Shown here one piece after another: positions 7,899 through 45,164 of a stretch of 64,000 bases of DNA. The translations under genes were made by a program, and so were the position numbers. The notes beneath the pieces are model-generated. The model worked only from the letters and a program-made list of their open reading frames with translations. It did not search any database and had not been told where the DNA came from. Location: the sequence record LC680885.1. The stretch is one strand, 5' to 3'. The stretch's first letter is position 1. Every line of letters starts with the position of its first letter.

Positions 7899-8453
7899 GT
7901 GTTTAAAATTTATCCTGATTACGATGAATTTTTAAAGAAAGAGTTAGATCGCTTTGGAATTGATACAGATAGCATAGCTTATCATTCTGATCTTAATTAC
8001 AATTATTGTAAAGAGAAATTAGAATCAATTGAAAAGGAAGATAAAGAAATGGAATTTAATTATTTGAATTTAGAAGATATATCTTTAAATAAAGAAGAGA
8101 CAAGTGGAGTTATGACTATAAGAGAATTAGTAAATACTATTGATCACTTGATATATACAGAAAATGAAGTTACACCTCTATACTACTTCTTTATGGATAA
8201 AATCGATTCACTTCCTATGATTAATATGATTACTTATAAAAAGGCAGCTAACACATTCTATGAAGAGTATAAAAGATATAACACTGGAAATCATTCAGCT
8301 TATATAAATATTAAAGGAGAATGGAAACAGTTATCATTTAATCAATTTAAAGAATCTTTAAAAGAAGTTTTATTATCTTCACATAAAGAAAGCAATGTTG
8401 ATAAATTATTTAAAGAGTTAAATAATTTAACTGTAAAAGATAATTTTTCATAA
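7899..8453 (+). CDS. Hypothetical protein with degenerate C-terminal tag (..KELNNLTVKDNFS)
   Basis: ORF; terminal K-13/V-6/F-2 pattern. Confidence 0.7.
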   Translation: MFKIYPDYDEFLKKELDRFGIDTDSIAYHSDLNYNYCKEKLESIEKEDKEMEFNYLNLEDISLNKEETSGVMTIRELVNTIDHLIYTENEVTPLYYFFMDKIDSLPMINMITYKKAANTFYEEYKRYNTGNHSAYINIKGEWKQLSFNQFKESLKEVLLSSHKESNVDKLFKELNNLTVKDNFS

Positions 8454-8481
8454 TTATTCTTAGATCAAAATTAGTAATAAG

Positions 8482-8533
8482 TATATATTATAAATATGAG
8501 ACAATGTTCATTAACTTGATCATTGTCTCATAT
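8482..8533 (+). promoter_or_regulatory. Early-type promoter plus stem-loop
   Basis: TATATATTATAA 8482-93; ATATGAGACAATG / CATTGTCTCATAT. Confidence 0.6.
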
Positions 8534-8562
8534 ATTGTTTTATTTTTTATAAAAATAAGGAG

Positions 8563-10452
8563 ATGAATTGGATAATGGAAAATAATACATTAAATTCGTA
8601 TATAAAGGATAATTTTAAATATTTTAAAGATGATAAATTAGAAATTGATAAAATATTTAAATTTAAAGATGATAAGACTAAAGAAAAATTTGAAATGTTT
8701 TTTAATGGAGTTATATATACATTGAAAAATTTAAGTTATAGTGAAGTATCTAAAATGTATAATGAAACAATTAAAGAGAAAAGTAATGTTCAAGGTAAAG
8801 CTGAAAGTTATATAAATTATTTAAATAATGAATTGAAAAATAGAGGACTAGATGAAGAAACTAAAAAACTTTATAAAGATTTATTAATGACTTTAAAAGC
8901 TGATTTGAAAAGATATAATGCTAATTTAGATGACAGCATTATAAATAAATTATTCAAAAATAAGAATATATCAATATCTTATTATAGTTTAATAGTACCT
9001 TATAATATTGCTAACGAAATTGAATTTAATAAAAACTATTATAGTTTTCTTGGATTAGATGATTTCACTAAATTCATAATCTTTCCATATTATCAACTTC
9101 TATATTTATCTAAAGGTAATCTAAAAAATATTCATATAAAGAATACAGACATAAATCTTCATAGTTACTTTATTGATATAATAAAGAAGTATATTAGAAA
9201 TTTAATAGATAATAAAGATTTAGATACATTAAAAGAATTATTAGACGTATTAACAAATGAGCACGAATATTTAAGATCTCTAAGACATACCGACTATAGA
9301 AAAGGTAATGGAAAAAATTTATTAGAGTTACTAATAGAAATGAATTTTAATGAATTTAAGGAAATATTATATGAAATGATATATATTATAATGAATAATA
9401 ACTTGAAAAAAGAATTAAAATCAGAAATGAATTATGATATATACAAGCATAGTATACTTTTAGTAAGTTTAATGAATAATGAGGTAGAAGAACATAGACA
9501 AACTAAATTTAATAGTAAATTTTTAATAGAGAGTAATAATACAATTAGAGCAACTGCTATTTCAGATTCATACGGTAAAAATGAGTACTACCAAAATAAC
9601 TTATTAGGTCACTATATTAATGATCTATATGTAGATAAAAATAAAATAAATAAATTTAAAAGAGTTAATAAAGTTAGAAGTTTTAAATCTTTTATTTATT
9701 TAACTAACCAAAGATGTATTATCGGTGGTGAGAAATATTATAAATACTTGTATAAATATTTATTTGATCCAAGTAATTTAACTAGAGAAGAGTTTGAAGT
9801 ATCTACATTATTAATTAAATTAATAACTTGTAAATCTAGTAATCAATTAAAGAAAGTTATGGAAAATGCTAAAACTGACTCTGTATTAAATAATATTTTA
9901 TTTGAAAATGAAATTAGTGATATAATTAAAATTGGTATACAGATGAATATTAATACTATATTCAATAAAAAAGGTTTAAGTAAAATTAATACAGTTGATT
10001 TAACTGTAGGAAATATTGTAAATCCTTTGTTATATAATAAAGCAAATGATTATGAAGAACAAACAGAAATCATTGATTCAGTATTTAAAAATTTTACTTA
10101 TGATATAGATATCAATTTTGATAAATATTATTATAAAGATTTAAATGAATATTTTGAAAATAAATTAAATTTAGGTCTTCTAAAAGAATCAAATATAGAT
10201 ATTAGTATTAATATTAATTATAATAAAATTGCAAAAACTATTGTAAATAATATTAAAGATAAGCTTAGAGGAAAATATCATTTTGAAAGGAATGAATTTA
10301 TTATTACTTACGATAAGATGAATATTACTCGTTTAACCACTACAGAATTTTGTAATGGTTTATGTGAATATTTAAGTAAATACTTCCCAGAAGAAGCTAA
10401 AAAGTTAAATAAGAGTTTTAGAGCTGAAATTGTAAATACAATGTTTAGATAA
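8563..10452 (+). CDS. Large hypothetical protein (629 aa) with degenerate C-terminal tag (..KSFRAEIVNTMFR)
   Basis: Long ORF, AAGGAG RBS; no catalytic motif recognised. Confidence 0.8.
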   Translation: MNWIMENNTLNSYIKDNFKYFKDDKLEIDKIFKFKDDKTKEKFEMFFNGVIYTLKNLSYSEVSKMYNETIKEKSNVQGKAESYINYLNNELKNRGLDEETKKLYKDLLMTLKADLKRYNANLDDSIINKLFKNKNISISYYSLIVPYNIANEIEFNKNYYSFLGLDDFTKFIIFPYYQLLYLSKGNLKNIHIKNTDINLHSYFIDIIKKYIRNLIDNKDLDTLKELLDVLTNEHEYLRSLRHTDYRKGNGKNLLELLIEMNFNEFKEILYEMIYIIMNNNLKKELKSEMNYDIYKHSILLVSLMNNEVEEHRQTKFNSKFLIESNNTIRATAISDSYGKNEYYQNNLLGHYINDLYVDKNKINKFKRVNKVRSFKSFIYLTNQRCIIGGEKYYKYLYKYLFDPSNLTREEFEVSTLLIKLITCKSSNQLKKVMENAKTDSVLNNILFENEISDIIKIGIQMNINTIFNKKGLSKINTVDLTVGNIVNPLLYNKANDYEEQTEIIDSVFKNFTYDIDINFDKYYYKDLNEYFENKLNLGLLKESNIDISININYNKIAKTIVNNIKDKLRGKYHFERNEFIITYDKMNITRLTTTEFCNGLCEYLSKYFPEEAKKLNKSFRAEIVNTMFR

Positions 10453-10468
10453 AAAGGAGAAATTAAAG

Positions 10469-11023
10469 ATGGATGTTAAAAAAACGTTTAATGCAGATAT
10501 TATGGAGACAGATAGAAGAATTTTCTATAACATTATTAACGTAGAAATGTCTCTTAGTGATAAAAGAAAAATGTATAATAAAGTCAATGATGAAAATGAG
10601 GTTTTAACATATGTATTTGATAGTTACACAGATTACGTATTGATGGAAAATGAAGGTATAATGACTATGGCAAAAGATTTAAATGATTTCATTAAACATT
10701 CTATTTTCGATTACCATTTTTCCTCTTTAATAAAACAATTTTTACCTTCGACCAACTTCCGGAATTTTGGAGATTTTGTCCTTATGTTAGAAAGAGAATT
10801 ATTTGCACCTAATCAAGAAACTTTAAGTCAATTCTCTTCAAAAGATGATATAATTTATGTGTACTATAATACTACTCTAAATAAAATAATTATTGTTGAT
10901 CACATTATGTACTTAAAAGCACTAATGGAGTACGTTAAAGAAGAAAAAGATTTCTATGAAGATTTATATATAGAATTTGAAAAAGAAGTTAAAAAATATT
11001 TAGTTGAAAATAACTTTAAATAG
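10469..11023 (+). CDS. Hypothetical protein, C-terminal tag family (..EFEKEVKKYLVENNFK)
   Basis: ORF with RBS; terminal motif. Confidence 0.8.
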   Translation: MDVKKTFNADIMETDRRIFYNIINVEMSLSDKRKMYNKVNDENEVLTYVFDSYTDYVLMENEGIMTMAKDLNDFIKHSIFDYHFSSLIKQFLPSTNFRNFGDFVLMLERELFAPNQETLSQFSSKDDIIYVYYNTTLNKIIIVDHIMYLKALMEYVKEEKDFYEDLYIEFEKEVKKYLVENNFK

Positions 11024-15468: not shown

Positions 15469-15915
15469 ATGAAATATTATAAGGTTAATTATAATGGTAT
15501 ATTGAAAATATTGAATCTAGATGATTTTGAAGATGATAGAATTATTGAAACACTTAGTAATATTGAGTTATATTTAAAAGAAGATGAAGAAATTAGATTA
15601 TTGGATTTATTTAAAAAGCCAACTATAGCAATGGACACTCGAATTACAAAAGAAAGAGATAACCTTTATATGAATGGTCATCTCTTTTTAGAAGTTGAGA
15701 ATGCATCATGTAAACTATGGAGTTACCATATTAATTTAAATGGTGACGAAACATTAAATGAAATATATGAAAGGATATATAACGGATACGATAAAATTTT
15801 CTCTTTTAATAAAATGAGAGAAGATGGTCTATTATTTTTATATGAATATGAACATTATACAGAAATATCTGAAAAAGAATATAAAGAAAATAAGGTTAAA
15901 GAAAATTTTAAATAA
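15469..15915 (+). CDS. KYY...EKEYK..FK family protein
   Basis: Starts MKYYKV, ends TEISEKEYKENKVKENFK. Confidence 0.8.
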   Translation: MKYYKVNYNGILKILNLDDFEDDRIIETLSNIELYLKEDEEIRLLDLFKKPTIAMDTRITKERDNLYMNGHLFLEVENASCKLWSYHINLNGDETLNEIYERIYNGYDKIFSFNKMREDGLLFLYEYEHYTEISEKEYKENKVKENFK

Positions 15916-15933
15916 AAAAGGAGATTTTAAATT

Positions 15934-16386
15934 ATGAAATATTATATTTTAACACAACAGGGGATTGCTGAAGTTTTAGGTATTGATAGTGAATCGGTTT
16001 ATTGCTATAGAAATTTATTTAGAGATGATGAATTATATTTAAAAGAAGATGAAGAAATTAAATTTTCAGAAATTATTACTAATCAAACACCGGATATAGA
16101 ATACAAAGTTGTTGGAACAAATAAAGATACCGTAACAGTGATAGCTTATATGGAAATAGATTTAGGTGAAGGAGATTATCATCAAATTGGATCTTGCAGA
16201 ATGAAATTAGATAAAGATAGAACTCTAGAAGAAGTATACAATATTGTATATGAGAAAATGTCCAATAGAACTTTTTCATTCAATAAAGCTAAAGAAATGG
16301 GTATATCTTTATATGAAGAGAGTGATTATGAAGAAGTATCTAAAAAAGAATATAAAAAATACAAAGTAGAGAATAATTTTAAATAA
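15934..16386 (+). CDS. KYY...EKEYK..FK family protein
   Basis: Starts MKYYIL, ends EEVSKKEYKKYKVENNFK; full-length paralog of 16903 and 15469. Confidence 0.8.
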   Translation: MKYYILTQQGIAEVLGIDSESVYCYRNLFRDDELYLKEDEEIKFSEIITNQTPDIEYKVVGTNKDTVTVIAYMEIDLGEGDYHQIGSCRMKLDKDRTLEEVYNIVYEKMSNRTFSFNKAKEMGISLYEESDYEEVSKKEYKKYKVENNFK

Positions 16387-16406
16387 TGGAATGAGTTGTT
16401 ATTGTT

Positions 16407-16886
16407 ATGGAAAAATATTATAGATTAACTTTAGAGGGTGTTAGTTTTATTTTAAATGATTGTGAAGAAAACGATATAGTTAAATCAACTTATAATGAAG
16501 ATGAAAATTATGTACATTTAGAATCTTTATTAAATGTAGGAATGCCTTATGAAACTATATATTTTAAAGATAGACATAAAATAGTATTTAAAGAAAATGA
16601 AAATATATTCAAGACATTGATAAATTCAATTAAAAATAAATATTATGACTTTGATGATAAAAATATGGAATTTCAAGTAGGCATTGGTGATGATGAAATA
16701 AAGGTCAAATCACCGATGCCAGTATTTTCTAAAGTGAATATATTTAATTTTAAAGTTAATAAAGAAATGGACATTATTGATTTTATGGACAATTATAAAA
16801 TTAATGTATTAATTAAAGATAAGCATTACATTGAAATTACTGAAAAAGAATATAAAAATATTATAATTAAAAATACATTTAAATAA
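16407..16886 (+). CDS. KYY...EKEYK..FK family protein
   Basis: Starts MEKYYRL, ends IEITEKEYKNIIIKNTFK. Confidence 0.8.
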   Translation: MEKYYRLTLEGVSFILNDCEENDIVKSTYNEDENYVHLESLLNVGMPYETIYFKDRHKIVFKENENIFKTLINSIKNKYYDFDDKNMEFQVGIGDDEIKVKSPMPVFSKVNIFNFKVNKEMDIIDFMDNYKINVLIKDKHYIEITEKEYKNIIIKNTFK

Positions 16887-16902
16887 TAAGGAGATTTTAT
16901 AA

Positions 16903-17361
16903 TTGAAATATTATGAATTTAATAAAAAAGGAATTATTAAAATATTAGGATTAGATACAGCTTATTTAAGAGAAGATGAAGATATTTTTAGAGAAGGAAA
17001 TCTTTATTTAAAAGAAAATGAATCAATAAAAATAAAAGATATTATAACAAATAAAAAAGATATGAAATTTAATTGCAGTCTTTATGAAGGATCTGAAGAT
17101 AGCTCATTAATGAAAGCTAATTTAACTTTCAGACATGGGTCAGGGCAACTTTTATTGAATATTGAATATATTGATTTAAAAGAAATAAAAGATCACACTG
17201 TTGAAGAAGTTTACAAATACGCTAAAGATTTAGTTTTAAATAAAACATTTTCTTTTAATAAAGCTGAAGAGCTTGGTATATGTTTATATGAAGGAAAAGA
17301 ATATGAAGAAATTACTGAGGAAGAATATAAAAAATACAAAGTAGAAAATACTTTTAAATAA
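16903..17361 (+). CDS. KYY...EKEYK..FK family protein
   Basis: Starts MKYYEF (TTG), ends EEITEEEYKKYKVENTFK. Confidence 0.8.
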   Translation: MKYYEFNKKGIIKILGLDTAYLREDEDIFREGNLYLKENESIKIKDIITNKKDMKFNCSLYEGSEDSSLMKANLTFRHGSGQLLLNIEYIDLKEIKDHTVEEVYKYAKDLVLNKTFSFNKAEELGICLYEGKEYEEITEEEYKKYKVENTFK

Positions 17362-17381
17362 TGAAATGAGGTGTTATTGTT

Positions 17382-17831
17382 ATGGACAAATATTATAAAT
17401 TAACAGCGGAAGGTATATTTGATGTTTTCAAATTAGATAAAAAACACATTATATTCCCAGAAGATAAAAATACAATAATAGATTTCAGATCAAAGGAAGA
17501 ACGTATAGAGAAAATTAATGAACTTATATACTTTAAAGATAATCAAGAAATAACAATAAACTCATTATCTAATTTAACAGACAATATCGTAATAGATAAA
17601 TCAGGTTCTAAATATACATTTAACCATTTAATAGAAATATCATTCACTACTTTTAGTCATAAAAAAAGATATAACAAAACAATCAATGTACCGAATGTAT
17701 TTAAAGGAACTGTAAGAGAAAATAGTAGTAGAAGTGCCTTAGATATACCGATAGATATCAACAATATTGATAAAATAGAATTAACATTTAAAGAATATAA
17801 AGATCTAGTAATAAAAGAAACTTTTAAATAA
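17382..17831 (+). CDS. KYY...EKEYK..FK family protein
   Basis: Starts MDKYYKL, ends IELTFKEYKDLVIKETFK. Confidence 0.8.
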   Translation: MDKYYKLTAEGIFDVFKLDKKHIIFPEDKNTIIDFRSKEERIEKINELIYFKDNQEITINSLSNLTDNIVIDKSGSKYTFNHLIEISFTTFSHKKRYNKTINVPNVFKGTVRENSSRSALDIPIDINNIDKIELTFKEYKDLVIKETFK

Positions 17832-17847
17832 TAAGGAGATTTTATAA

Positions 17848-18297
17848 TTGAAATATTATAAATTAAATAAGGATGGTTATATTAAATTTTTAGGGTTAGA
17901 TGTTTTGCCTGGACTTAAAACCTCAATTGTTGAAAAAGAAATAAAAAATAAAAACTTCATTGTCAAATATTGCAATGGAGCAGATTTTTGTTTTACATTA
18001 GATGAAATTAATAAAATGAAAAACAAAGATATTTACCCTAAACTTGGATTTGAAAGTCTAACTGAAAAAGTTAATCATGAAATAGAAAATAATCCAATAG
18101 TATTTGTTAATAGAAAATATGAAGATGCTAAAGCTTTAATTCATGTAGATTTAATTATTAATAATGAAGAAACTACATTAATGACTATGCCAAGATTTAA
18201 TATTAATTTTTTAAATCATAATTTGTATATGGAACACTTTGATGAAATAACAGAGAAACAGTATAAAAATATTATGGTAAAAGATTCATTTAAGTAA
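17848..18297 (+). CDS. KYY...EKEYK..FK family protein
   Basis: Starts MKYYKL (TTG), ends DEITEKQYKNIMVKDSFK. Confidence 0.8.
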   Translation: MKYYKLNKDGYIKFLGLDVLPGLKTSIVEKEIKNKNFIVKYCNGADFCFTLDEINKMKNKDIYPKLGFESLTEKVNHEIENNPIVFVNRKYEDAKALIHVDLIINNEETTLMTMPRFNINFLNHNLYMEHFDEITEKQYKNIMVKDSFK

Positions 18298-18310
18298 AAC
18301 TCAATTTAAA

Positions 18311-18357
18311 TATATATTATAAAATTGTGAAAGATGTATGATACTTATACATCTTTC
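18311..18357 (+). promoter_or_regulatory. Early-type promoter plus stem-loop
   Basis: TATATATTAT; GAAAGATGTAT / ATACATCTTTC. Confidence 0.6.
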
Positions 18358-18379
18358 TAAAATATTTATTTAAAGAGAG

Positions 18380-18808
18380 GTGAAAAAGATAATGAGTTCT
18401 AATTTTGATTATTATATATTGCAATCGAGTATTTCAGAAGCTAGAAAAAGGATTAAGAATAATCTAGATGTAAATGGATATATGGTTATAAGACAAATAT
18501 TTTTCAGTCATTTAGATTATAAAGATTATTATAATATGTATCATAAAGTAAATAATGTAGAAGATTATTACAATGATATTATATTAGAAAGTATTAAGGA
18601 TATTATATTTGATGAAGAAGGTAAACTTAATGAAGAAGTAGCATTTAGTTTAATTAGAGGTTCTAATTCGAATATATGTGCTTTAATTAAAGATAATAAA
18701 GGCAATTACAAAATTTATAAAAAAGATAAATATGTAATTAAAGCTATAGAAGATTTATTATCTGAGAAAGATTATAAAAGAATATTGGTTAAAAATACTT
18801 TTAAATAA
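18380..18808 (+). CDS. C-terminal tag family protein
   Basis: Ends DLLSEKDYKRILVKNTFK. Confidence 0.75.
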   Translation: MKKIMSSNFDYYILQSSISEARKRIKNNLDVNGYMVIRQIFFSHLDYKDYYNMYHKVNNVEDYYNDIILESIKDIIFDEEGKLNEEVAFSLIRGSNSNICALIKDNKGNYKIYKKDKYVIKAIEDLLSEKDYKRILVKNTFK

Positions 18809-18853: not shown

Positions 18854-19519
18854 TTGGTGATTTTATTGATAAAAATGCATTTAATAAACTTTCAAAAAAG
18901 GTCTATGAATAGTTATAAGAAGAATTTAAACACAATTGTACTTTTCATAGATTATGATAAAAATATTTTCAACCAAATTAATAATCAATTAGTTATAGAT
19001 GTATTAGGTAATGATACTATAAGATTAAATAATGCTAATTATTCATTAATGTTAGATGAGAAGATTTTTAGTTCTGAAAGGACAACAATTGATTTCTATA
19101 ATAAAATAGTAAATAATGATATATTAAATATTATTAAAGAAAATATATCTAATGTAGATAATTATTCTAAATTAAAAGAAATCAATAATATGACTGATAG
19201 TGAATTTAATGATATTATTAATAAAGATAATTTATTTAAATGTCAAAATAAATACTTCAGTATGAATAAAATACCTTATATAGAAAAAGAAATACCTGAA
19301 AGTTTTTATCTAGATCATTTTAAAGAGATTAATTTAGATTTTATATTTGAGAAGCTTTTTGAAGAGAATAGAGAAGATGAAGAAAAATTAAAGTACGTTT
19401 ATACTTTAGCTGAATTATTTCTAACACTCAAACAAGGTAAGAATATATTTTATAATTATAATAAAGAGGTAGATAAGAAATATTATAGATCTATATTTAT
19501 AAATTCTTTATTTAATTAA
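18854..19519 (+). CDS. C-terminal tag family protein (degenerate); start uncertain
   Basis: Ends KEVDKKYYRSIFINSLFN; TATATTAC at 18837-44 upstream. Confidence 0.7.
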   Translation: MVILLIKMHLINFQKRSMNSYKKNLNTIVLFIDYDKNIFNQINNQLVIDVLGNDTIRLNNANYSLMLDEKIFSSERTTIDFYNKIVNNDILNIIKENISNVDNYSKLKEINNMTDSEFNDIINKDNLFKCQNKYFSMNKIPYIEKEIPESFYLDHFKEINLDFIFEKLFEENREDEEKLKYVYTLAELFLTLKQGKNIFYNYNKEVDKKYYRSIFINSLFN

Positions 19520-31509: not shown

Positions 31510-31586
31510 CAATAAAAGAGTGGATTATTTTCTATGATCCACTCTACATATTTAAATTAAAAAAAAAACGAAAAGAGGAAATTAAA

Positions 31587-32093: not shown

Positions 32094-32116
32094 TAAGAAG
32101 AAAAGAGTGAAATGAA

Positions 32117-32584: not shown

Positions 32585-32615
32585 AAAATAAATAAAAAGA
32601 ATAGAGGAAAATAAA

Positions 32616-36146: not shown

Positions 36147-36171
36147 AATATAACTAAAGAGAGGTAATTTC

Positions 36172-37259: not shown

Positions 37260-37276
37260 ATAAGGAGAAATTAAAA

Positions 37277-37735
37277 ATGAGATACTTTAAAGGTATAGTA
37301 GCAGGAAAAGACTTTTTCTTAAAAGCAGATAATGAAGAAAATGCCATTAAGGAATTAGCATCAAAAGAAATTAATTCTATAGGATCTTTTACAATGTTAA
37401 GTAATGAAAAACAGAAATACCTAATAATTTTCTTTAATGAAGATGAAGATAAATTTGTTGTTGGAAATGGATTAGAATCATATATATCATTAGACAGTCT
37501 TAAATCTGAATTAGAATCTAAAGATTTAGAATGTTATTATTTAGATTTAGGTAATACAGATAATATCGAGATAAACGGTATTATAAAAAATCAAGAATAC
37601 ACATTAACAGAAATAATAATGGAAAGTATTAAATTAACTATGAATGATTTTTATCAACAAGTTATAAATTCTGTATTAACTGAATTAACTGAAAAAGAAT
37701 ACAAAAATTCAATAGTTGTTAAAAATTTTAAATAA
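37277..37735 (+). CDS. C-terminal tag family protein
   Basis: Starts MRYFK, ends TELTEKEYKNSIVVKNFK. Confidence 0.8.
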   Translation: MRYFKGIVAGKDFFLKADNEENAIKELASKEINSIGSFTMLSNEKQKYLIIFFNEDEDKFVVGNGLESYISLDSLKSELESKDLECYYLDLGNTDNIEINGIIKNQEYTLTEIIMESIKLTMNDFYQQVINSVLTELTEKEYKNSIVVKNFK

Positions 37736-37754
37736 CTAGGAAGGAATAAAAATA

Positions 37755-38225: not shown

Positions 38226-38280
38226 TTACTATTTAAATATATATTATATAAATGAAGTTAATTAAAATACAGGAGATGAA

Positions 38281-38628
38281 TTGGATATGTTAAACGATAC
38301 TAAAAAGATTTTAGACAGAATATACGACAAAATAAATGGTGATTTAATTGTTATTTCAGAGTGTAAAGATCTATTTGATAAGGAATTAAATTACACTTTA
38401 ACTGAAGGTAATGAAGAAACAACAAATCTTGATTATTTGGCAGATTCTTTAATTGTAGTTGCTTCAGATATATTTACTTTAAAAGAAGTACTTAATATTG
38501 ACGAAGAAACTATTAATAATGAACTATTAGCAGAATTTAAACTAAGCTATAGAATGATACAAAATTTTCATATGAAATTAGAATTAAATAGTTATAAATT
38601 AAAAAAGATTAAAACCTCGGTTGAATAA
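38281..38628 (+). CDS. Hypothetical protein
   Basis: TATATATTAT at 38238-47 upstream; AGGAG RBS. Confidence 0.7.
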   Translation: MDMLNDTKKILDRIYDKINGDLIVISECKDLFDKELNYTLTEGNEETTNLDYLADSLIVVASDIFTLKEVLNIDEETINNELLAEFKLSYRMIQNFHMKLELNSYKLKKIKTSVE

Positions 38629-38647
38629 ATATAGGAGATGATTAGGA

Positions 38648-39133
38648 ATGAATTATTTAAAGAATGAAAAAGGGGAGGTCTTTCCAGTCAATGAAGAAGG
38701 AATGGAGAATATTATATTCTTTCTTCTAGACTACTCACAGAAAAATGATTATAACACAATGAATTTGATTAAAGAGATAAATGATCACGTGATGAAAGGC
38801 GAAAATATAAGTAATAAATTTATTAATGAAAAGACAAAAGAAACGATATTAACATTAGGTAAAGTAAAAGGTAATTTAACTAATGAATTAGCTAGAAGTG
38901 GTTATATAGTTAATTTCTCTAGAAATAAAATATCACTATCGATATATGTAAAAAATAATAGTTTTAAATTAGTAAGAATTTCAGATCATAATATTAATAA
39001 AAAAATAAATAAAAAAGGTGTAATCAGTAATAGATTTGACGGACAATTAGTATGTAAAAATAATCTAGTTAAATCTTCTGATTTGAAAAAGCATGGAATT
39101 GATATTAATGAAGGAATATATTATTTAGAATAG
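38648..39133 (+). CDS. Hypothetical protein with S.Y...RISDH motif
   Basis: ORF with RBS. Confidence 0.7.
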   Translation: MNYLKNEKGEVFPVNEEGMENIIFFLLDYSQKNDYNTMNLIKEINDHVMKGENISNKFINEKTKETILTLGKVKGNLTNELARSGYIVNFSRNKISLSIYVKNNSFKLVRISDHNINKKINKKGVISNRFDGQLVCKNNLVKSSDLKKHGIDINEGIYYLE

Positions 39134-39134
39134 G

Positions 39135-39428
39135 ATGAAACTATATATGAAAAAGATAATAATGTTTTTAGGTATTTTGTTACTAACAACGGTATTGGTC
39201 GGTTGTGGAGAAAGTGTTGATTCAAAAGATAAAAAAGATTCAATCAAAACAGTAACTATTTATAGTAAAGACGGTAAAGTATTACATCAATATGAAGGAA
39301 AAGTTAGTGCTGAGAGAGTAACGGATAACAAATTTACTAAAATTGATATAGACGGTAAGAAATTAAGAGTTGTAAATGCAGATGTAGTTATTGAAGAGAA
39401 AGGTATTGAGAAATTTGAAACAAAATAA
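39135..39428 (+). CDS. Phage lipoprotein (DUF5052-like)
   Basis: Lipobox LVGC; TIYSKDGKVLHQYEGK. Confidence 0.7.
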   Translation: MKLYMKKIIMFLGILLLTTVLVGCGESVDSKDKKDSIKTVTIYSKDGKVLHQYEGKVSAERVTDNKFTKIDIDGKKLRVVNADVVIEEKGIEKFETK

Positions 39429-39436
39429 AGATTAAG

Positions 39437-39480
39437 TATATATTATAATTATGAAGAAAGATATTATCATATATCTTTCT
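39437..39480 (+). promoter_or_regulatory. Early-type promoter plus stem-loop
   Basis: TATATATTATAA; AGAAAGATAT / ATATCTTTCT (same family as 29481). Confidence 0.6.
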
Positions 39481-39490
39481 AATAAAATTA

Positions 39491-39802
39491 ATGGAGGAAT
39501 TTGTTATGGCAAAATTAAATGAAGAAGTATTAAGAGACTTTCAAGTAAAAACTGAAATTGATGGAGAATTTGAAGTAATGGAATCTGATGAGCTTGGTGT
39601 TGATGAAGCTTATGAAATTGAATTAATTAAAGAATTGGGATTAGATGTCGATTCAAGTGTATTCTCTTATGCAATATCAGAAAAAGATGATGAAGAAAAT
39701 ACGTATACTTTAGAATATAGTCATGAAGGCGTTCTATTAACTATTCATGATATCGATTTTGAAAATGGTATTCATGATACTATTTATAAAAATGTAATTT
39801 AA
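39491..39802 (+). CDS. Small acidic protein (start probably MAKLNEE at 39506)
   Basis: GGAGG RBS; E/D-rich. Confidence 0.7.
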   Translation: MEEFVMAKLNEEVLRDFQVKTEIDGEFEVMESDELGVDEAYEIELIKELGLDVDSSVFSYAISEKDDEENTYTLEYSHEGVLLTIHDIDFENGIHDTIYKNVI

Positions 39803-39811
39803 TGATTTAAG

Positions 39812-39844
39812 TATAGCTGATATCTTTAACGGATATCAGCTATA
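39812..39844 (+). terminator. Stem-loop terminator
   Basis: TATAGCTGATATC / GATATCAGCTATA plus T-tract. Confidence 0.75.
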
Positions 39845-39885
39845 TTATTTTTATTTTTTTACTTAAAGGAGATGAAAAGGATAAT

Positions 39886-40497
39886 ATGAATTATTTTGAA
39901 TTGGAATATACAGGTTTAATTAATAATAATAAATTAGATAATCTAGTTCTACACAAACAAGAAAATGAAGAAATTGAATCGGGTGTTTTAAATATGGTTT
40001 TATTTAAATTGTATCTAAAAGAATTCTATAATGATAATATGGATGATAATGATTTATGTAAGAAACTAAAAATGGAAATAAGAAGTATTCATAGTTATAA
40101 TAATTCAGAAATTTATATTAATGAAGACTTTGCTGAAATATATGATGGTATTAATCCGAATAATAATATTAAATCAGGAAAAATAAATAAAGATTATGAA
40201 TATTTATTTAAATTTATTAAAGATAATATAAATGAAAAAGATTTAAATAATATACATGTGATTAAATTTACAACATTTGAAATAGAGAAATATAAACCTG
40301 TTGTGATTTTTATAAACTCAGATAAACTTAGAATTAAGACCAATAAATCAATTAGTAGATATACATCAACAAATGAATTTGTATTCTATAATATTTCAAG
40401 CGAAAGTTTATATACATTAATGAAAAATACAAATAGAATAAGAAATATAACGGAAAAAGAATATAAAAAAGAATTAGTTAAAAGGAGTTTTTTATAA
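39886..40497 (+). CDS. C-terminal tag family protein
   Basis: Starts MNYFEL, ends RNITEKEYKKELVKRSFL. Confidence 0.8.
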   Translation: MNYFELEYTGLINNNKLDNLVLHKQENEEIESGVLNMVLFKLYLKEFYNDNMDDNDLCKKLKMEIRSIHSYNNSEIYINEDFAEIYDGINPNNNIKSGKINKDYEYLFKFIKDNINEKDLNNIHVIKFTTFEIEKYKPVVIFINSDKLRIKTNKSISRYTSTNEFVFYNISSESLYTLMKNTNRIRNITEKEYKKELVKRSFL

Positions 40498-41045
40498 TGT
40501 ATGAAGTTAATAAAAAATTTAAATATGCTAAAAGAGATAAAGAATTCACATTATTCCACCATAAATCAAAAGAAAAAATAACTGATTCATTTATAATTAA
40601 TAATTATATTTCATATGTATTATATCAATGCTACGAAAGAACACCAGGAAATGCAGAAGTTTGGTTGGAAATTAATGATATAAATAATATAAAAGGTGAT
40701 TTCTTATTTAAATTTATGTTTGACAACAGACCTTCTTTTGGTTCTAATTATTTTCCTAAGTGTAAATTAAATATACAAGATAACAGTGATAATAATATTG
40801 TAACTATTGAATTTAGTGATAAATATAAAAGACATAATTTTATTCTAGAAGAAATATCTAAATTTAATAATGTTCATATTAATTTTTATGAAGAAGTATT
40901 ATTTACTAATGAAGATGAAGAATTCAAGTTATTAAAGAATGTATTTAAAACTGATAACATTAAATATTACCAAAATAAAGATTTAATTAGTTATATTTCA
41001 GACAAAGAAGCTAGAAAAATTTTAGTAAAAGAAAACTTTAAATAG
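40497..41045 (+). CDS. C-terminal tag family protein
   Basis: Ends SYISDKEARKILVKENFK. Confidence 0.8.
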   Translation: MYEVNKKFKYAKRDKEFTLFHHKSKEKITDSFIINNYISYVLYQCYERTPGNAEVWLEINDINNIKGDFLFKFMFDNRPSFGSNYFPKCKLNIQDNSDNNIVTIEFSDKYKRHNFILEEISKFNNVHINFYEEVLFTNEDEEFKLLKNVFKTDNIKYYQNKDLISYISDKEARKILVKENFK

Positions 41046-41061
41046 AATAGGGGCAAATAAA

Positions 41062-41595
41062 TTGAATAAATATTTTAAATTTAAATTAAATAATAAAAGT
41101 GATTACGATGTATTTAAATTTTCAGGAAATGAAGAAGAAATAAGCGATTCTAAAATTATAGAGTCTTATTTTGATTATATGTTTAATTATTATATAAATG
41201 AAGCAATACCTGACTCCAGTATGATTAATATTGCTGTATTTACTGAAGGTAAAAGAAAAAGATTATTGAGATTTACTATAGATAAACCACCAATTTATAT
41301 AAAAGAGCCAGTTAGTACTTTATTTATGAATGAAAATGATGAAGATAAACAAATTAATTTTAAAGAATTTAACGAAATTAAAAAATTTATACACGAAAAG
41401 ATTATGGAATTGAATAAAGGTGAATTTTATATTTATATTGATTATAATTTTGATTATTCTTATAGAATAGATTACGATGATGTATTTGATAAAATATTAT
41501 TTAATAAAAATAATCTAAATCTTTATTCATCATTTATTAAAGAAACAGATGAAAATGAATATAAAAATTATCTAGTAAGAGAGAATTTTAAATAA
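41062..41595 (+). CDS. C-terminal tag family protein
   Basis: Starts MNKYFKF, ends KETDENEYKNYLVRENFK. Confidence 0.8.
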   Translation: MNKYFKFKLNNKSDYDVFKFSGNEEEISDSKIIESYFDYMFNYYINEAIPDSSMINIAVFTEGKRKRLLRFTIDKPPIYIKEPVSTLFMNENDEDKQINFKEFNEIKKFIHEKIMELNKGEFYIYIDYNFDYSYRIDYDDVFDKILFNKNNLNLYSSFIKETDENEYKNYLVRENFK

Positions 41596-41612
41596 GGAAG
41601 TGAGACAGATAA

Positions 41613-42389
41613 ATGGAATATGTTATGATAAATAAATTATTAACAAAAAATGATTCATCTGAATTAAAAATAAACATGGTTAAACTATATAAAGAGGAAG
41701 AAGACTTTTTCAATTTCTTTTTAAACTTTATTATAGAATATAATTCATATTATATAGGAAATTATAAATACTTTTATAGTATAGATTCATTATCAGATTA
41801 TAATTCAGATTATCAAATAAATGGAAATCCTTATGTGCCATTTGAGGAAGGGATAAAGGTAAATGAAGTCATTCATATTTATAAAAATAAATTATTTAGG
41901 AATATAAGTAAAGATATTGAAAATAGAATAACCGTACTTTATGTAGAAGACAAAGAAGACGATATTTCCTATTATATATTAATATCTAATTACTTTAATA
42001 AAAAATTTAAAAAAGAATATAAAGAAGAACTTCCCGATAAAGAAAAATTGTTAGCTAGACTTATAGTAAGATCCTTTCTAAATGAAAAAATTTTATTAGA
42101 TTCACATTCAGAATTTTTAGTTATTAAAGATAAAGAAAAATTGAATAATTTAATTAATAATTTAATGAAAAATCAAAAATACAAAATTTTAAATTTTGAT
42201 TTCTTAAGTAATAGGGAATTAAAATATAATGGAGTAATATTTAATACAAATTTATATGATAATAAACTAATCCTGAAGTATTTAAAAGGAATAGACTACA
42301 AAGATATTATTAATAAAGATAAAGAAAAAATTACGTTTATAAATGAAAAAGGATATAAAAAACTAGCATTGAAAGAATCATTTAAATAA
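41613..42389 (+). CDS. C-terminal tag family protein
   Basis: Ends TFINEKGYKKLALKESFK. Confidence 0.8.
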   Translation: MEYVMINKLLTKNDSSELKINMVKLYKEEEDFFNFFLNFIIEYNSYYIGNYKYFYSIDSLSDYNSDYQINGNPYVPFEEGIKVNEVIHIYKNKLFRNISKDIENRITVLYVEDKEDDISYYILISNYFNKKFKKEYKEELPDKEKLLARLIVRSFLNEKILLDSHSEFLVIKDKEKLNNLINNLMKNQKYKILNFDFLSNRELKYNGVIFNTNLYDNKLILKYLKGIDYKDIINKDKEKITFINEKGYKKLALKESFK

Positions 42390-42400
42390 ATAATAAATAT

Positions 42401-42460
42401 TCTCATCCATTCATTATATAATAACTTTTAATTATATAATAATTTTTAGAATGGATGAGA
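42401..42460 (+). promoter_or_regulatory. Long-loop hairpin whose 3' arm contains the RBS of 42468; loop carries two ATTATATAATA repeats
   Basis: TCTCATCCATTC / GAATGGATGAGA, 36-nt loop. Confidence 0.55.
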
Positions 42461-42467
42461 TGCTTTT

Positions 42468-43127
42468 ATGAGTAATTATTTATATCGTTTTAACAAAGAG
42501 AATGTAAATATCTTCTATCATAAAAGGACTAATAATGGTCATAAAATGTTATTTAATAATAGTAATGATAAAGATAGATCTATATACTTAATAAATACTG
42601 ATGAAGAAATCAATAATATGGAACTAGTATCTAAATATATTGCTGGAAAAGTATTTGAAATACTAAACCAAGAAAATATGAAAATAGTACATATGGATTT
42701 CTTTAATAGTAAATTAGAATTCTTTATAAGTAGATCATCCAAGAATAAATATATAATGAATATGTATTTTAGTTTAAAAAGTTATAATGATCTAATAGAA
42801 AATGAAAAAGAATTTATAGATAGTGTTAATGAGCTTAATTTAGACTTTTTAAAATCAGTTTCTTTAGATCAAGACAATAATCATGTATTAGATATGACAT
42901 TAATATTTTTAATAGATAAAAATAAAATAGATGAATTTATTAAAAATCTATTTTACATTAATTATGTAAAGATAATAGAATTTATAATAGATACTATATC
43001 AGTATATGCAGATGATTACAAGAAATTTAATGAAGAAATAAATATTCTTTTGGATCATAGAAATTTTGTAGAGGAAATAACATATAAAGAATATAAAAAG
43101 ATAATGACAAAAGAGATGTTTATTTAA
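42468..43127 (+). CDS. C-terminal tag family protein
   Basis: Ends EEITYKEYKKIMTKEMFI. Confidence 0.8.
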   Translation: MSNYLYRFNKENVNIFYHKRTNNGHKMLFNNSNDKDRSIYLINTDEEINNMELVSKYIAGKVFEILNQENMKIVHMDFFNSKLEFFISRSSKNKYIMNMYFSLKSYNDLIENEKEFIDSVNELNLDFLKSVSLDQDNNHVLDMTLIFLIDKNKIDEFIKNLFYINYVKIIEFIIDTISVYADDYKKFNEEINILLDHRNFVEEITYKEYKKIMTKEMFI

Positions 43128-43140
43128 GGAGTAATTAACT

Positions 43141-43851
43141 ATGAAGATTTCAGCCAATAAAGAATTATTAGGAAAGAAAGTTATACCTTTAGGTTTTAAA
43201 CAACTTAATAACTTATATAAAGATCATGATTATGTATATTTAAGAATTCCTGAAATATTTAATGTATTTGATAAGTATCAATTTAAAGATGATAAATTTG
43301 TATATCTTAAAACAGAAATAAAACCCAGTACTATTGTAGATTTAATAGATTCTTTATCAAGTGGTTTTAATTGGTTAATAAATGAATATATTTCTAATGA
43401 TATACTAAATATACATTATATAAAGAAAAATTTATTAGACATTTCCAATAGTGAATATAAAACTCTAGAAGAAACAAGATCTCAGTTAGATTTAGAATTA
43501 GAATTCATAAGTAGTAATGAAAAACAAAGAAAGCAATCTAATATTTTAATAAAGGATATTCATAAAGAAATAAATTATATAAGGAATGAATACACAAAAG
43601 TATTCACTCTTAAGAAAAGTAAAACCAGAAATAATAAACCAATAAAAATAAAAATTAGAAATTTATATGATGAAGATCCAATATCTATATTAAAAATAAT
43701 ATTAGACTTAGGAGAAGAATATTGTATGAATAGTACTATATTTAACGCATTTACTTATTCATTAATGTTAACAAATAATTTAGATTTCATAGACGAAAAA
43801 GAATTTCAGGATATAGTTAAGAAAGAGAAAGTGAAAAATACTTTCATTTAA
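43141..43851 (+). CDS. C-terminal tag family protein (4-aa insertion in tag)
   Basis: Ends DFIDEKEFQDIVKKEKVKNTFI. Confidence 0.75.
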   Translation: MKISANKELLGKKVIPLGFKQLNNLYKDHDYVYLRIPEIFNVFDKYQFKDDKFVYLKTEIKPSTIVDLIDSLSSGFNWLINEYISNDILNIHYIKKNLLDISNSEYKTLEETRSQLDLELEFISSNEKQRKQSNILIKDIHKEINYIRNEYTKVFTLKKSKTRNNKPIKIKIRNLYDEDPISILKIILDLGEEYCMNSTIFNAFTYSLMLTNNLDFIDEKEFQDIVKKEKVKNTFI

Positions 43852-43857
43852 AACATT

Positions 43858-43898
43858 ATTCATATAGTTTGAGGAAATTTTCCTCAAACTATATGAAT
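43858..43898 (+). terminator. Stem-loop terminator
   Basis: ATTCATATAGTTTGAGGAA / TTCCTCAAACTATATGAAT plus T-tract. Confidence 0.8.
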
Positions 43899-44048
43899 TA
43901 TTTTATTTTTTTTTCTAAAAATATAAACTAATTTATATTAATAATTTTTATAATGTATCATTCACTTAGTCGCAAATATTTATTTATTTTAAGAACATAA
44001 ATTTTATATCAAATAATATAGAATTTTTAAAAAGGAGAATTTAATTTT

Positions 44049-44612
44049 ATGGAAAAATATGATAAATTAACTGAAGAATTAGAAGCTTTATATGAGCAAT
44101 CTCAAGAAGAAGCTCTAGAAGAACAGTTCGAAAGCATTATCGAATCAACTGATGAAGATAAAGCAGAAGAAGTTGAAGATAAAGATTCTAAAGAAGATTC
44201 AGACGAAGAAGAAACATCTGTTGAAGAACAATTTAACAGTATCTTAGAATCAGAAGATGAAGAATCTGATGAGGAAGAAGATGACGAAGATTCAGAAGAA
44301 GAACCGGTTGAAGAATCTGATGAGGAAGATTCAGAAGACGATTCAGAAGATGATGAAGATTCTTTAGAAGAAGAATTAAATCGTTTATTTGAAGAAAATG
44401 AAGACCCAGAAATGGATGTCGAAAAGCAAACTACAAAAGCTAATGACATGAACTCAAAAAAATCATCTGACTCTACTGAACATCCTGAAGAAGATGTGAA
44501 AAAAATCACTTCAGAAGATGAAGACGAAGAAGAAGATGCTGAAGATGACGAAGAAGAATCTACTAATGAAGATGAATCATTAGAAGAATCATTAGATCGT
44601 ATCTTTGGTTAA
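44049..44612 (+). CDS. Extremely acidic protein with five helical repeats; candidate prohead core/scaffold or DNA mimic
   Basis: AAGGAG RBS; D/E dominated; AACA-type motif at 43994. Confidence 0.75.
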   Translation: MEKYDKLTEELEALYEQSQEEALEEQFESIIESTDEDKAEEVEDKDSKEDSDEEETSVEEQFNSILESEDEESDEEEDDEDSEEEPVEESDEEDSEDDSEDDEDSLEEELNRLFEENEDPEMDVEKQTTKANDMNSKKSSDSTEHPEEDVKKITSEDEDEEEDAEDDEEESTNEDESLEESLDRIFG

Positions 44613-44634
44613 TTATTAATTAATCTTTAAAATA

Positions 44635-44666
44635 TCCCCTAACCTTATTAATTTAAGGTTAGGGGA
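44635..44666. terminator. Bidirectional terminator
   Basis: TCCCCTAACCTTA / TAAGGTTAGGGGA between convergent genes. Confidence 0.8.
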
Positions 44667-44681
44667 TTAATATTGTATTTT

Positions 44682-45140
44682 TTATCTGAAATAATTAGTA
44701 TTATCAGTCATTTTTCTTCCAAAAGCATCTAGTCCATCTAATGGATTAACTTTATCTCCAGTTGTTTTAAAATCATCTCCACCATAAGTGCCGCTAAAAT
44801 TTGTATCTACGCCTTTAGATAATTCTTCACTCATTTTATTTAAGTGTCTTACTCTTTCAACTTTTCTCTGATAATAGTCTTCTGCTTCTTGTTGAGATTT
44901 TAATCTATTTTCATCAATAGTTTCGTTATCTTTTAATTTAGTTACTGGAGTAAAACCATCCATAACTACATAAAATTTATCAATTTGATCCTGATAAATA
45001 AAAGGTATTTTAGTTTTTAAATGTAAAGTAGTTGGTTCATCTTCATACTGTAATGTCTCATATTCAAGTATATTACCTTCTTTATCGACAGTGACAGATA
45101 TATCCATCATAATTTCTTCTTTTTTCTTTTCTTCTGACAA
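44682..45140 (-). CDS. Hypothetical protein downstream of tail-fibre gene
   Basis: ORF (TTG start) with AGAGAG RBS. Confidence 0.7.
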   Translation of the reverse strand: MSEEKKKEEIMMDISVTVDKEGNILEYETLQYEDEPTTLHLKTKIPFIYQDQIDKFYVVMDGFTPVTKLKDNETIDENRLKSQQEAEDYYQRKVERVRHLNKMSEELSKGVDTNFSGTYGGDDFKTTGDKVNPLDGLDAFGRKMTDNTNYFR

Positions 45141-45164
45141 GTCTTTTCATCTCTCTTTCATATT

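What the first reader, a model, noticed from the sequence alone, without database searches (positions are those of the whole stretch)
39886..43851. Second array of six larger, unrelated proteins carrying the same C-terminal tag
Seen: 24 kb from the first array, six tandem ORFs of 177-258 aa end RNITEKEYKKELVKRSFL, SYISDKEARKILVKENFK, KETDENEYKNYLVRENFK, TFINEKGYKKLALKESFK, EEITYKEYKKIMTKEMFI and DFIDEKEFQDIVKKEKVKNTFI. An isolated member at 37277-37735 ends TELTEKEYKNSIVVKNFK. Lengths and bodies differ from the first array. Inference: the tag is modular and has been joined to different domains, rather than being a leftover of one tandem duplication.
Basis: partly seen in the sequence, partly recalled or inferred. 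Interest (0 to 1): 0.75.

Follow-up and report, generated by a model that had tools for sequence, protein, structure and literature searches.

The report
Phage gene family sharing one C-terminal module
Six neighbouring genes of the giant Staphylococcus phage S6 belong to an undescribed family of about 40 fast-evolving phage proteins that look unrelated except for the same ~20-residue strand-plus-helix ending in Phe-Lys, which probably connects them all to one shared partner.

Summary
The window is the last 64 kb of Staphylococcus jumbo phage S6. All six ORFs (39886-43851) and the isolated one (37277-37735) exist and end as quoted. The tail is conserved as protein, not as DNA. It ends 41 of 277 S6 ORFs (0.84 expected by chance) and at least 29 ORFs in the divergent relative SA1. 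It was not found in 50 kb of Bacillus phage AR9, in IMG/VR, or outside this phage clade among 1.84 billion protein representatives.

Array 2 is a terminator-bracketed, syntenic unit in all ten related phages. It holds five body types, not six, because a2_2 and a2_3 are a lineage-specific tandem duplicate already down to 25% identity. With tails masked, no other bodies are related by profile comparison. Confident AlphaFold models of a2_3 and of array-1 a1_2 do not retrieve each other's family by Foldseek. In both models the tail is a structured short strand plus a 12-residue terminal helix, not a loose tag.

No fusion event, tail-less body or cassette exchange was found. Best reading: a clade-specific multigene family held together by a shared C-terminal docking module. 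Its function is unknown.

The parts
39810..39846 (+). Hairpin terminator (16-bp stem, T-run) closing the upstream early unit. It sits 39 nt before a2_1, so array 2 has no room for its own consensus early promoter.
   Evidence: The TATATTAT match at 39841 is the stem end and lacks the extended promoter consensus.
39886..40497 (+). a2_1, 203 aa, tail ..ITEKEYKKELVKRSFL. The codons AAA-AGG-AGT of the tail embed the Shine-Dalgarno sequence for a2_2, whose ATG overlaps the a2_1 stop.
   Evidence: Orthologs in all relatives at 30-37% identity to Machias/SA1, tail kept. dN/dS 0.25-0.62.
40497..41045 (+). a2_2, 182 aa, tail ..ISDKEARKILVKENFK. Recent tandem paralog of a2_3.
   Evidence: Absent in LY01. 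A single a2_2/3 gene in Machias, PB50, AH12 and SA1.
41062..41595 (+). a2_3, 177 aa (TTG start), tail ..TDENEYKNYLVRENFK. Modelled alpha/beta fold with no PDB match.
   Evidence: AlphaFold pLDDT 86.7, pTM 0.83; tail = strand 159-162 plus helix 164-175. Foldseek finds only its own orthogroup; PDB best E 0.037.
41613..42389 (+). a2_4, 258 aa, tail ..INEKGYKKLALKESFK. Fast-evolving body (48% identity even to LY01).
42468..43127 (+). a2_5, 219 aa, tail ..ITYKEYKKIMTKEMFI. The slowest-evolving member (73-76% identity to Machias/SA1, dN/dS 0.08-0.12).
43141..43851 (+). a2_6, 236 aa, tail ..DEKEFQDIVKKEKVKNTFI with a 4-residue insertion in the helix.
43858..43898 (+). Bidirectional hairpin terminator (19-bp stem) closing array 2.
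   Evidence: Also annotated as a terminator in Madawaska at the same place.
37277..37735 (+). Isolated carrier, 152 aa, tail ..LTEKEYKNSIVVKNFK. Its own body family.
15469..18808 (+). Array 1: seven carriers of 142-159 aa directly after the NAD-dependent ligase gene. a1_1 to a1_6 form one body family with an MKYYxL N-terminus.
   Evidence: a1_2 model pLDDT 86.1, tail = strand 132-135 plus helix 137-148.
7899..11023 (+). Three further carriers with variant tails: 7899-8453 (184 aa, ..LTVKDNFS), 8563-10452 (629 aa, ..AEIVNTMFR, first gene after the early promoter at 8484) and 10469-11023 (184 aa, ..KKYLVENNFK).
   Evidence: SA1 orthologs keep the tails.
18854..19519 (+). Carrier with a degenerate tail (221 aa, ..YYRSIFINSLFN), conserved in SA1.
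39439..39446 (+). Core of the nearest upstream consensus early (virion RNAP type) promoter, TATATTAT-N5-TGAAG. It is the likely source of read-through transcription into array 2.
   Evidence: The motif is taken from the MarsHill preprint and matches the annotated AR9 early promoters.

Best explanation
Array 2 is a terminator-bracketed run of six real genes for soluble proteins. It has five body types, with a2_2 and a2_3 a recent tandem duplicate. It belongs to a clade-specific multigene family of about 40 genes (about 15% of S6's ORFs) found only in the Staphylococcus S6/MarsHill/Machias/SA1 jumbo phages. The family is defined by a C-terminal module of about 20 residues: a short beta-strand, then a 12-residue lysine-rich helix, consensus phi-x-E-(I/L)-(T/S)-E-K-E-(Y/I)-K-x-x-phi-V-K-x-x-F-K-COOH. 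Shown: the module is conserved as protein, it is terminal, it is structured in the models, and the arrays grow by tandem duplication followed by very fast body divergence. Inferred: the genes are expressed early, because they lie in + strand units driven by virion-RNAP-type promoters. Also inferred: the module is kept constant because every member uses it for the same job, most likely docking to one shared partner, while the variable bodies supply different specificities (a hub-and-adaptor arrangement typical of host-takeover or counter-defence gene families). The partner and the biochemical function are unknown.
For: Identity and ORFs. Protein-level conservation: tail nucleotide identity 0.67 against 0.39 upstream and 0.36 downstream; codon positions 1+2 more conserved than position 3 (0.70 vs 0.61); V = GTT 5 / GTA 5; T = ACT/ACA/ACG. 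In most ortholog comparisons the tails accumulate synonymous changes with few non-synonymous ones, and whole-gene dN/dS is 0.08-0.62. Genome-wide family: 41 of 277 S6 ORFs against 0.84 expected, all on the + strand; SA1 has at least 29. Clade restriction: 0 of 60 ORFs in 50 kb of AR9; IMG/VR hits are all chance; the exhaustive HMM search finds only S6-like proteins; tblastn of four carriers finds only the Staphylococcus jumbo phages, 7-10 records each. Structured module: strand plus helix with block pLDDT mostly 85-96 in two independent models. Sharp module boundary 18-27 residues from the end. Conserved charged positions (K-13 31/40, K/R-10 35/40, K/R-5 32/40, K/R-1 31/40), invariant F-2, and tail net charge +1.85 against +0.13 for other C-termini, on bodies that cannot otherwise be aligned, argue for a common ligand. 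Duplication and fast divergence: a2_2/a2_3. iso and a2_1 to a2_4 are 28-38% identical between clades where most neighbouring genes are 58-93% identical to Machias. 17 of 41 S6 carriers have no SA1 body homolog. Early timing: five carriers are the first gene after a consensus early promoter, and 31 of 41 lie downstream of one. The motif matches the annotated AR9 early promoters.
Against: No fold-level or profile-level link joins the different bodies, so common descent of all members is assumed from the tandem arrangement and the a2_2/a2_3 precedent, not shown. Body sizes run from 62 to 629 aa, which is hard to derive from one ancestor without domain accretion. No partner was identified. Conserved exposed charges are inferred from helix periodicity, not from inspected coordinates. 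Expression timing rests on a promoter motif and analogy with AR9. Array 2 itself sits behind a terminator with no promoter of its own. The module could be purely structural.
Confidence: 0.55

Rival explanations
1. Portable address tag. The 20-residue module is an independent unit that has been fused repeatedly onto unrelated domains. It acts as a targeting signal, for example for loading into the virion, for delivery to a compartment or machine, or for timed degradation.
For: Bodies are unrelated by profile and by reciprocal Foldseek. The module boundary is sharp. Carriers range from 62 to 629 aa and include small helical-looking and long proteins. The module is strictly terminal.
Against: The tail is modelled as an integrated strand plus helix. 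No fusion, swap or tail-less body homolog was found in ten phages or elsewhere. The only documented growth event is a whole-gene tandem duplication. Carriers lie in early-promoter units, which does not fit virion cargo. The shallow DC4 virion proteome (15 proteins) lists no protein of a carrier's size.
Confidence: 0.25
2. Plain divergent paralog family. All members share one ancestral fold, and the C-terminal strand-helix is simply its most constrained structural element, with no shared partner.
For: Tandem arrays. a2_2/a2_3 already at 25% identity. Both models share a broad layout: N-terminal strand, a beta-meander starting near residue 54, a 13-14 residue helix, then a terminal strand-helix. 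Weak N-terminal resemblances exist: a2_5 ranks 2nd of 275 with the a2_2/3 N-terminal profile, S6 62757 scores 12.8 bits with the array-1 N-terminal profile, and carriers outrank non-carriers at p = 7e-5 and 0.006.
Against: Reciprocal Foldseek negative although good library models exist for both families. The N-terminal halves differ (beta-alpha-alpha vs beta-beta-long alpha). A non-carrier outranks a2_5 in the N-terminal test, and a2_1, a2_4 and a2_6 rank 42nd, 266th and 78th. Conserved lysines and glutamates in the tail are unexpected for a purely structural helix.
Confidence: 0.15
3. The conservation is at nucleotide level: a regulatory or recombination element (promoter, RBS cassette, terminator, PeSL-like mobile cassette) overlapping gene ends that merely translates into a similar peptide.
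For: The tail DNA is 67% identical between paralogs. In a2_1 the tail codons do double as the RBS of a2_2.
Against: Conservation stops at the stop codon (downstream 30 nt are 36% identical). Third codon positions are the least conserved, and synonymous codons alternate. Synonymous changes exceed non-synonymous ones in ortholog tails. The reading frame and terminal position are always kept.
Confidence: 0.02
4. Chance or compositional artefact of a 22% G+C genome rich in K, E, N, F and Y.
For: The proteome is strongly biased.
Against: 41 observed against 0.84 expected using the genome's own internal frequencies. 0 of 60 ORFs in equally AT-rich AR9. 0 matches in shuffles.
Confidence: 0.01

Closest known systems
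Lineage-specific gene expansions in jumbo phages (for example about 35 copies of a zinc ribbon in Bacillus phage G; Iyer et al. 2021, PMC7824862)
   Same: Dozens of paralogous small genes, largely in tandem, confined to one phage lineage and of unknown function.
   Different: Here the conserved part is only a ~20-residue terminal strand-helix, and the rest of each protein cannot be aligned between most members. The S6 family is not mentioned in that survey or in the S6-group genome papers.
Poxvirus ankyrin/PRANC (F-box-like) proteins and other large-virus multigene families with a constant terminal docking motif (own knowledge, not tested)
   Same: Architecture: a variable target-binding body plus a short conserved C-terminal module, in many tandem copies that evolve fast.
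   Different: No sequence or fold relationship. Bacteria have no SCF/ubiquitin system. The partner here is unknown. This is an analogy of design only.
Short terminal targeting peptides: T4 capsid-targeting sequence, encapsulin cargo-loading peptides, C-terminal type IV secretion signals (own knowledge, not tested)
   Same: Position-specific terminal signal shared by otherwise unrelated proteins.
   Different: Those signals are flexible, loosely defined peptides. The S6 tail is modelled as an ordered strand-helix. Carriers sit in early transcription units, and none was reported in the (shallow) DC4 virion proteome.
PeSL-type mobile regulatory cassettes between T4-type phage genes (own knowledge)
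   Same: A repeated conserved sequence at gene boundaries in hyperplastic early regions of large phages.
   Different: PeSLs are non-coding DNA (promoter plus stem-loop). The S6 element is coding, conserved at the amino-acid level and ends at the stop codon.
Theileria Tpr multigene family, defined by a conserved C-terminal domain (PMC10730637, seen)
   Same: A hypervariable family recognisable only by its C-terminal part, with some members orthologous between species.
   Different: Eukaryotic parasite, a much larger membrane-associated domain, unrelated sequence.

Membership tests
Tandem paralog family / lineage-specific expansion | Members lie in tandem arrays on one strand | tested here: met
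   Arrays at window 15469-18808 and 39886-43851 and S6 record 56-81 kb. All 41 carriers are on the + strand.
Tandem paralog family / lineage-specific expansion | Members are demonstrably homologous outside the shared motif | tested here: inconclusive
   Met for a2_2/a2_3 (hhalign 96%, TM 0.77-0.79) and for a1_1 to a1_6. Not met for a2_1, a2_4, a2_5, a2_6 and the isolated member, nor between arrays. Only weak N-terminal hints.
   The a2_3 and a1_2 models (pLDDT about 86) retrieve their own families in BFVD but not each other in the top 50. Only two bodies were modelled.
Portable terminal tag / targeting peptide | Strictly terminal position on many proteins | tested here: met
   Nearly all HMM hits end at residue -0 or -1. 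41 observed against 0.84 expected.
Portable terminal tag / targeting peptide | Flexible, structurally independent of the body | tested here: not met
   Both models give an ordered strand plus 12-residue helix with high pLDDT and pTM 0.75-0.83. This is prediction, not experiment.
Portable terminal tag / targeting peptide | Same body found with and without the tag, or the tag found on domains of known different families | tested here: not met
   No tail-less homologs in the phage collection. No carrier has a Pfam or PHROG domain except a guanylate kinase whose 1.9-bit, non-terminal match is taken as chance. One SA1 paralog of a1_7 lacks the tail.
Portable terminal tag / targeting peptide | A receptor or machine that recognises the tag | not testable with these tools
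   Needs interaction data.
Nucleotide-level regulatory cassette (PeSL-like) | Conservation independent of reading frame and extending into non-coding flanks | tested here: not met
   Flank identity 0.36-0.39 against 0.67 in the tail; third positions least conserved.
Clamp-binding / PIP-box-like C-terminal motifs | Consensus QL[SD]LF or Qxx[ILM]xx[FY][FY] at the C-terminus (own knowledge) | tested here: not met
   The position table shows no Q, a single aromatic at -2 and K at -1.
Excisionase/MerR-type HTH (lead for the array 1 N-terminus only) | Significant match to an HTH family | tested here: not met
   Pfam found nothing at E <= 1. The PDB profile search found no HTH. Only the beta-alpha-turn-alpha layout in the model is suggestive.

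The most novel reading that the evidence does not exclude
The C-terminal strand-helix is a true address label: a phage-specific docking signal that lets about 40 different early proteins plug into one phage or host machine (a hub, protease/chaperone, polymerase or packaging device). On this reading, 15% of the phage's genes form a single adaptor system with interchangeable specificity domains. No such system has been described in phages.
Probability: 0.25. Interest if true: 0.8.

Novelty: new variant of a known kind. Interest (0 to 1): 0.55.

Why it matters
About one gene in seven of a 267-kb therapeutic-candidate Staphylococcus phage belongs to a family that no database or paper describes. 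If the shared tail is a docking element, a single pull-down could assign a context to about 40 hypothetical proteins at once. It could also reveal a central node of host takeover or counter-defence in uracil-DNA jumbo phages. The family is also a clean natural example of how fast phage paralogs lose all detectable similarity while one short module is held fixed. That is relevant to how ORFans arise and to the limits of homology detection.

Tried and rejected
(1) Pfam and PHROGs on all carriers: nothing except a guanylate kinase with a chance-level, non-terminal tail match.
(2) Word-indexed protein searches: only close orthologs.
(3) IMG/VR scan with a back-translated tail: six hits, all with in-frame stops, so chance.
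(4) Exhaustive tail-profile search of 1.84e9 representatives: nine hits. Eight come from S6-like phages (one of them, P0016, is an a2_5+a2_6 read-through gene call) and one is a spurious repeat protein.
(5) Sequence search of the PDB with the array 1 profile and with a2_5: nothing significant.
(6) Foldseek of a2_3 against the PDB: nothing.
(7) N-terminal motif shared by carriers: modest enrichment only, not decisive.
(8) The idea that the TATATTAT at 39841 is array 2's promoter: rejected. It is the terminator stem and lacks the extended consensus.
(9) Virion-cargo idea: the DC4 proteome lists no carrier-sized protein, but with only 15 proteins it is too shallow to exclude it.
Model coordinates are not exposed, so no direct superposition was possible.
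(11) My first HMM-based census (35) both missed real carriers and included weak ones. It was replaced by the terminal-pattern census.
(12) Literature: no mention of the family in the MarsHill, DC4, PALS2 or jumbo-phage survey papers.


Full report
WHAT THE WINDOW IS. A megablast of 36000-46000 is 100% identical to Staphylococcus jumbo phage S6 (LC680885.1, record 239055-249055). The window is therefore the last 64 kb of that 267,055-bp record. Nine relatives range from 99.6% (DC4) through about 91% (Madawaska, MarsHill, PALS_2) and about 80% (Machias, PB50, AH12) to SA1 from S. lentus, which is barely alignable as DNA. G+C is 19-30%. These are AR9/PBS1-like phages with virion and non-virion multisubunit RNA polymerases. 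Pfam finds a glycosyltransferase, a UvsX-like recombinase, RNAP beta and beta' pieces and an NAD-dependent ligase on the + strand around the arrays. HU-like and RusA genes lie on the - strand, and relatives annotate the 998-aa gene at 45165-48161 as a tail fibre.

The six ORFs and the isolated one lie exactly where stated, and their C-termini read as quoted. Each has a Shine-Dalgarno sequence. a2_2's ATG overlaps the a2_1 stop. The odd a2_1 ending (VKRSFL) arises because its codons AAA-AGG-AGT are also the ribosome-binding site of a2_2. All seven genes have orthologs in every relative examined, with dN/dS of 0.08-0.62, so they are real genes. Two strong hairpin terminators (39810-39846 and 43858-43898) bracket array 2.

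PROTEIN, NOT DNA. Between paralogs the 48 nt encoding the tail are 67% identical. The 48 nt upstream are 39% identical and the 30 nt after the stop 36%. Codon positions 1+2 are more conserved than position 3 (0.70 vs 0.61). Wherever the AT-rich code allows it, synonymous codons alternate: V = GTT 5 / GTA 5, T = ACT/ACA/ACG, L = TTA/TTG/CTA. In most comparisons, ortholog tails collect synonymous changes but few non-synonymous ones. A regulatory DNA element is therefore excluded.

THE FAMILY IS MUCH LARGER THAN REPORTED. I fetched the rest of the S6 genome and scanned all 277 non-overlapping ORFs. A 14-seed tail HMM recovers the seeds and about 20 more proteins, almost all ending exactly at the C-terminus. 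The terminal pattern [VILT][KREVN]xxF[KRILNSV] ends 41 ORFs against 0.84 expected, all on the + strand, with sizes from 83 to 629 aa. Besides arrays 1 and 2 there is a third, bigger cluster at S6 56-81 kb. Within the window, further carriers lie at 7899-8453, 8563-10452, 10469-11023 and 18854-19519. Over 40 carriers, F at -2 is invariant and positions -11 and -6 are hydrophobic in 39 and 38. K/R dominates at -13, -10, -5 and -1 (31-35 of 40), and E is the commonest residue at -14 and -12. The tail carries +1.85 net charge against +0.13 for other S6 C-termini. Bodies are mostly acidic, and none has a TM-like segment.

DISTRIBUTION. SA1 has 24 strict carriers (0.74 expected), plus five with slightly deviant tails. 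In 50 kb of early-gene-rich, equally AT-rich Bacillus phage AR9, 0 of 60 ORFs match. A back-translated tail pattern finds only chance matches in IMG/VR. A tail-only profile run against 1.84 billion protein representatives finds only S6-group proteins plus one spurious repeat protein. tblastn of four carriers (a1_6, the 629-aa and 395-aa carriers, a2_5) finds only the Staphylococcus jumbo phages: 7 records for a1_6 and all ten for the others. No Pfam or PHROG family matches any true carrier. None of the genome papers, nor the jumbo-phage survey, mentions the family. The module and its bodies are thus an innovation of this clade.

ARE THE BODIES RELATED? BLAST with tails masked links only array 1 members. 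I built ortholog profiles from eight phages for each array 2 gene, the isolated member and seven neighbouring non-carrier genes, masked the tails and ran hhalign all against all. Only a2_2/a2_3 score (96%, 117 columns). Every other carrier pair is at or below 0.5%, no better than the controls. Unmasked, the top alignment for 18 of 21 family pairs is the last 16-32 residues, ending at both C-termini and never running on into the body. Iterative HMM clustering over S6, SA1 and the array 2 loci merges a1_1 to a1_6, merges a2_2 with a2_3 and merges a few array 3 genes. It leaves about 35-40 body clusters.

AlphaFold gave confident models for a2_3 (pLDDT 86.7, pTM 0.83) and a1_2 (86.1, 0.75). Foldseek of a2_3 against BFVD returns only its own orthogroup from four lineages (TM 0.68-0.97), and nothing in the PDB. 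a1_2 returns only three array 1 relatives (TM 0.75-0.88). Good library models exist for both families and neither appears in the other's top 50, so this is a valid reciprocal negative. The library search also misses evident paralogs such as a1_3/5/6/7, so it cannot speak for the unmodelled bodies. Secondary-structure order differs in the N-terminal halves (beta-alpha-alpha vs beta-beta-long alpha). Both then have a beta-meander, a 13-14-residue helix and the terminal strand-helix. Weak N-terminal resemblances exist but are not decisive.

WHAT THE TAIL LOOKS LIKE. In both models the module is a 4-residue strand followed by a 12-residue helix and the terminal F-K. Block pLDDT is mostly 85-96. 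It is therefore predicted to be an ordered part of the protein, not a floppy tag.

EVOLUTIONARY DYNAMICS. Array 2 is syntenic in all relatives. Machias, PB50, AH12 and SA1 have a single a2_2/3 gene, the S6/Madawaska/PALS_2 group has the duplicate pair, and LY01 lacks a2_2. So there is no cassette shuffling here, only one duplication and one loss. iso and a2_1 to a2_4 are just 28-38% identical between clades, whereas most neighbouring genes are 58-93% identical to Machias. a2_5 is slow (73-76%). Within an orthogroup the tail is only moderately better conserved than the body (57 vs 44%, p = 1e-4) and is not the best-conserved segment. Each body is thus under its own constraint, and the tail is the only constraint common to all. 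Elsewhere turnover is high: 17 of 41 S6 carriers have no SA1 body homolog, a1_6 is missing from three phages, and one SA1 paralog of a1_7 has lost the tail.

TIMING. The MarsHill preprint gives TATATTAT as the core of the early promoter used by the virion RNAP. In the window the intergenic copies share an extended consensus, TATATTAT-N5-TG(A/T)(A/G), which matches the promoters annotated in AR9. Genome-wide there are 25 intergenic + strand sites. Five are directly followed by a carrier, and 31 of 41 carriers lie downstream of one. Array 2 has no promoter of its own. It must be read through the 39810 terminator from the promoter at 39439, or from an unrecognised promoter. Early expression is therefore an inference.

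CONCLUSION. This is an undescribed, clade-specific multigene family whose only common feature is a structured, positively charged C-terminal strand-helix. The function is unknown. The shallow DC4 virion proteome gives no sign of packaging. The decisive work is to model all members and compare them with tails removed, and to search for a tail-dependent common interactor.

Noticed in passing
window 44049-44612 (+): A 187-aa extremely acidic protein lies directly after array 2's terminator. It has four internal repeats (EEQFESIIES, EEQFNSILES, EEELNRLFEE, EESLDRIFG), is conserved in all relatives and has no Pfam match. It could be a DNA mimic or a partner for the basic tails. That is speculation.
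   Followed up: partly
window 40480-40499: The a2_1 tail codons AAA-AGG-AGT double as the Shine-Dalgarno sequence of a2_2, whose ATG overlaps the a2_1 stop (TAATG). This dual coding explains the deviant ending VKRSFL.
   Followed up: yes
window 28409-30435: There are three copies of a ~95-nt early-promoter cassette (GAAAAAGCGTAACA...TATATTATAATTATGAAG). A 97%-identical 99-nt repeat containing a hairpin lies at 29705-29803 and 30337-30435. Small + strand membrane-protein genes follow each copy, and the - strand ORFs 29533-29763 and 30180-30395 are probably spurious.
   Followed up: partly
window 31554-33092: Three tandem paralogous genes (about 155-168 aa) share a signal/anchor-like N-terminus (MKKLL..AVIGAAG.FGY) and have low-complexity Q/E/N-rich middles.
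   Followed up: no
window 5626, 8484, 18313, 20057, 26092, 28144, 28449, 29483, 30183, 34142, 38240, 39439: An extended early-promoter consensus, TATATTAT-N5-TG(A/T)(A/G), is shared by the intergenic sites. It matches the annotated AR9 early promoters. S6 has 25 intergenic + strand copies genome-wide.
   Followed up: yes
protein P0016 (metagenomic relative of window 42468-43851): In one metagenomic fragment the a2_5 stop is replaced by a sense codon, and a2_5 and a2_6 are called as one ORF. This is either a natural fusion variant or a sequencing or gene-calling error.
   Followed up: no
L020 (SA1) about 20542-20997, record 59542-59997: An SA1 paralog of a1_7 has a different C-terminus after AIEDIT (..RECEVLYFKRS). 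It is the only probable tail loss seen.
   Followed up: partly
window 15469-15540 and the other array 1 N-termini: Array 1 proteins start KYYxLTxxGIxxILGLD, modelled as strand-helix-turn-helix. This resembles excisionase/MerR-type HTH motifs, but no sequence search supports it.
   Followed up: partly
window 60799-62061 (+): A lone 420-aa + strand ORF sits inside the - strand structural module, where the GC skew flips locally. It has no Pfam match.
   Followed up: partly
window 20886-21188 (-) and 48733-49359 (-): An HU-like DNA-binding protein and a RusA-type Holliday junction resolvase.
   Followed up: yes
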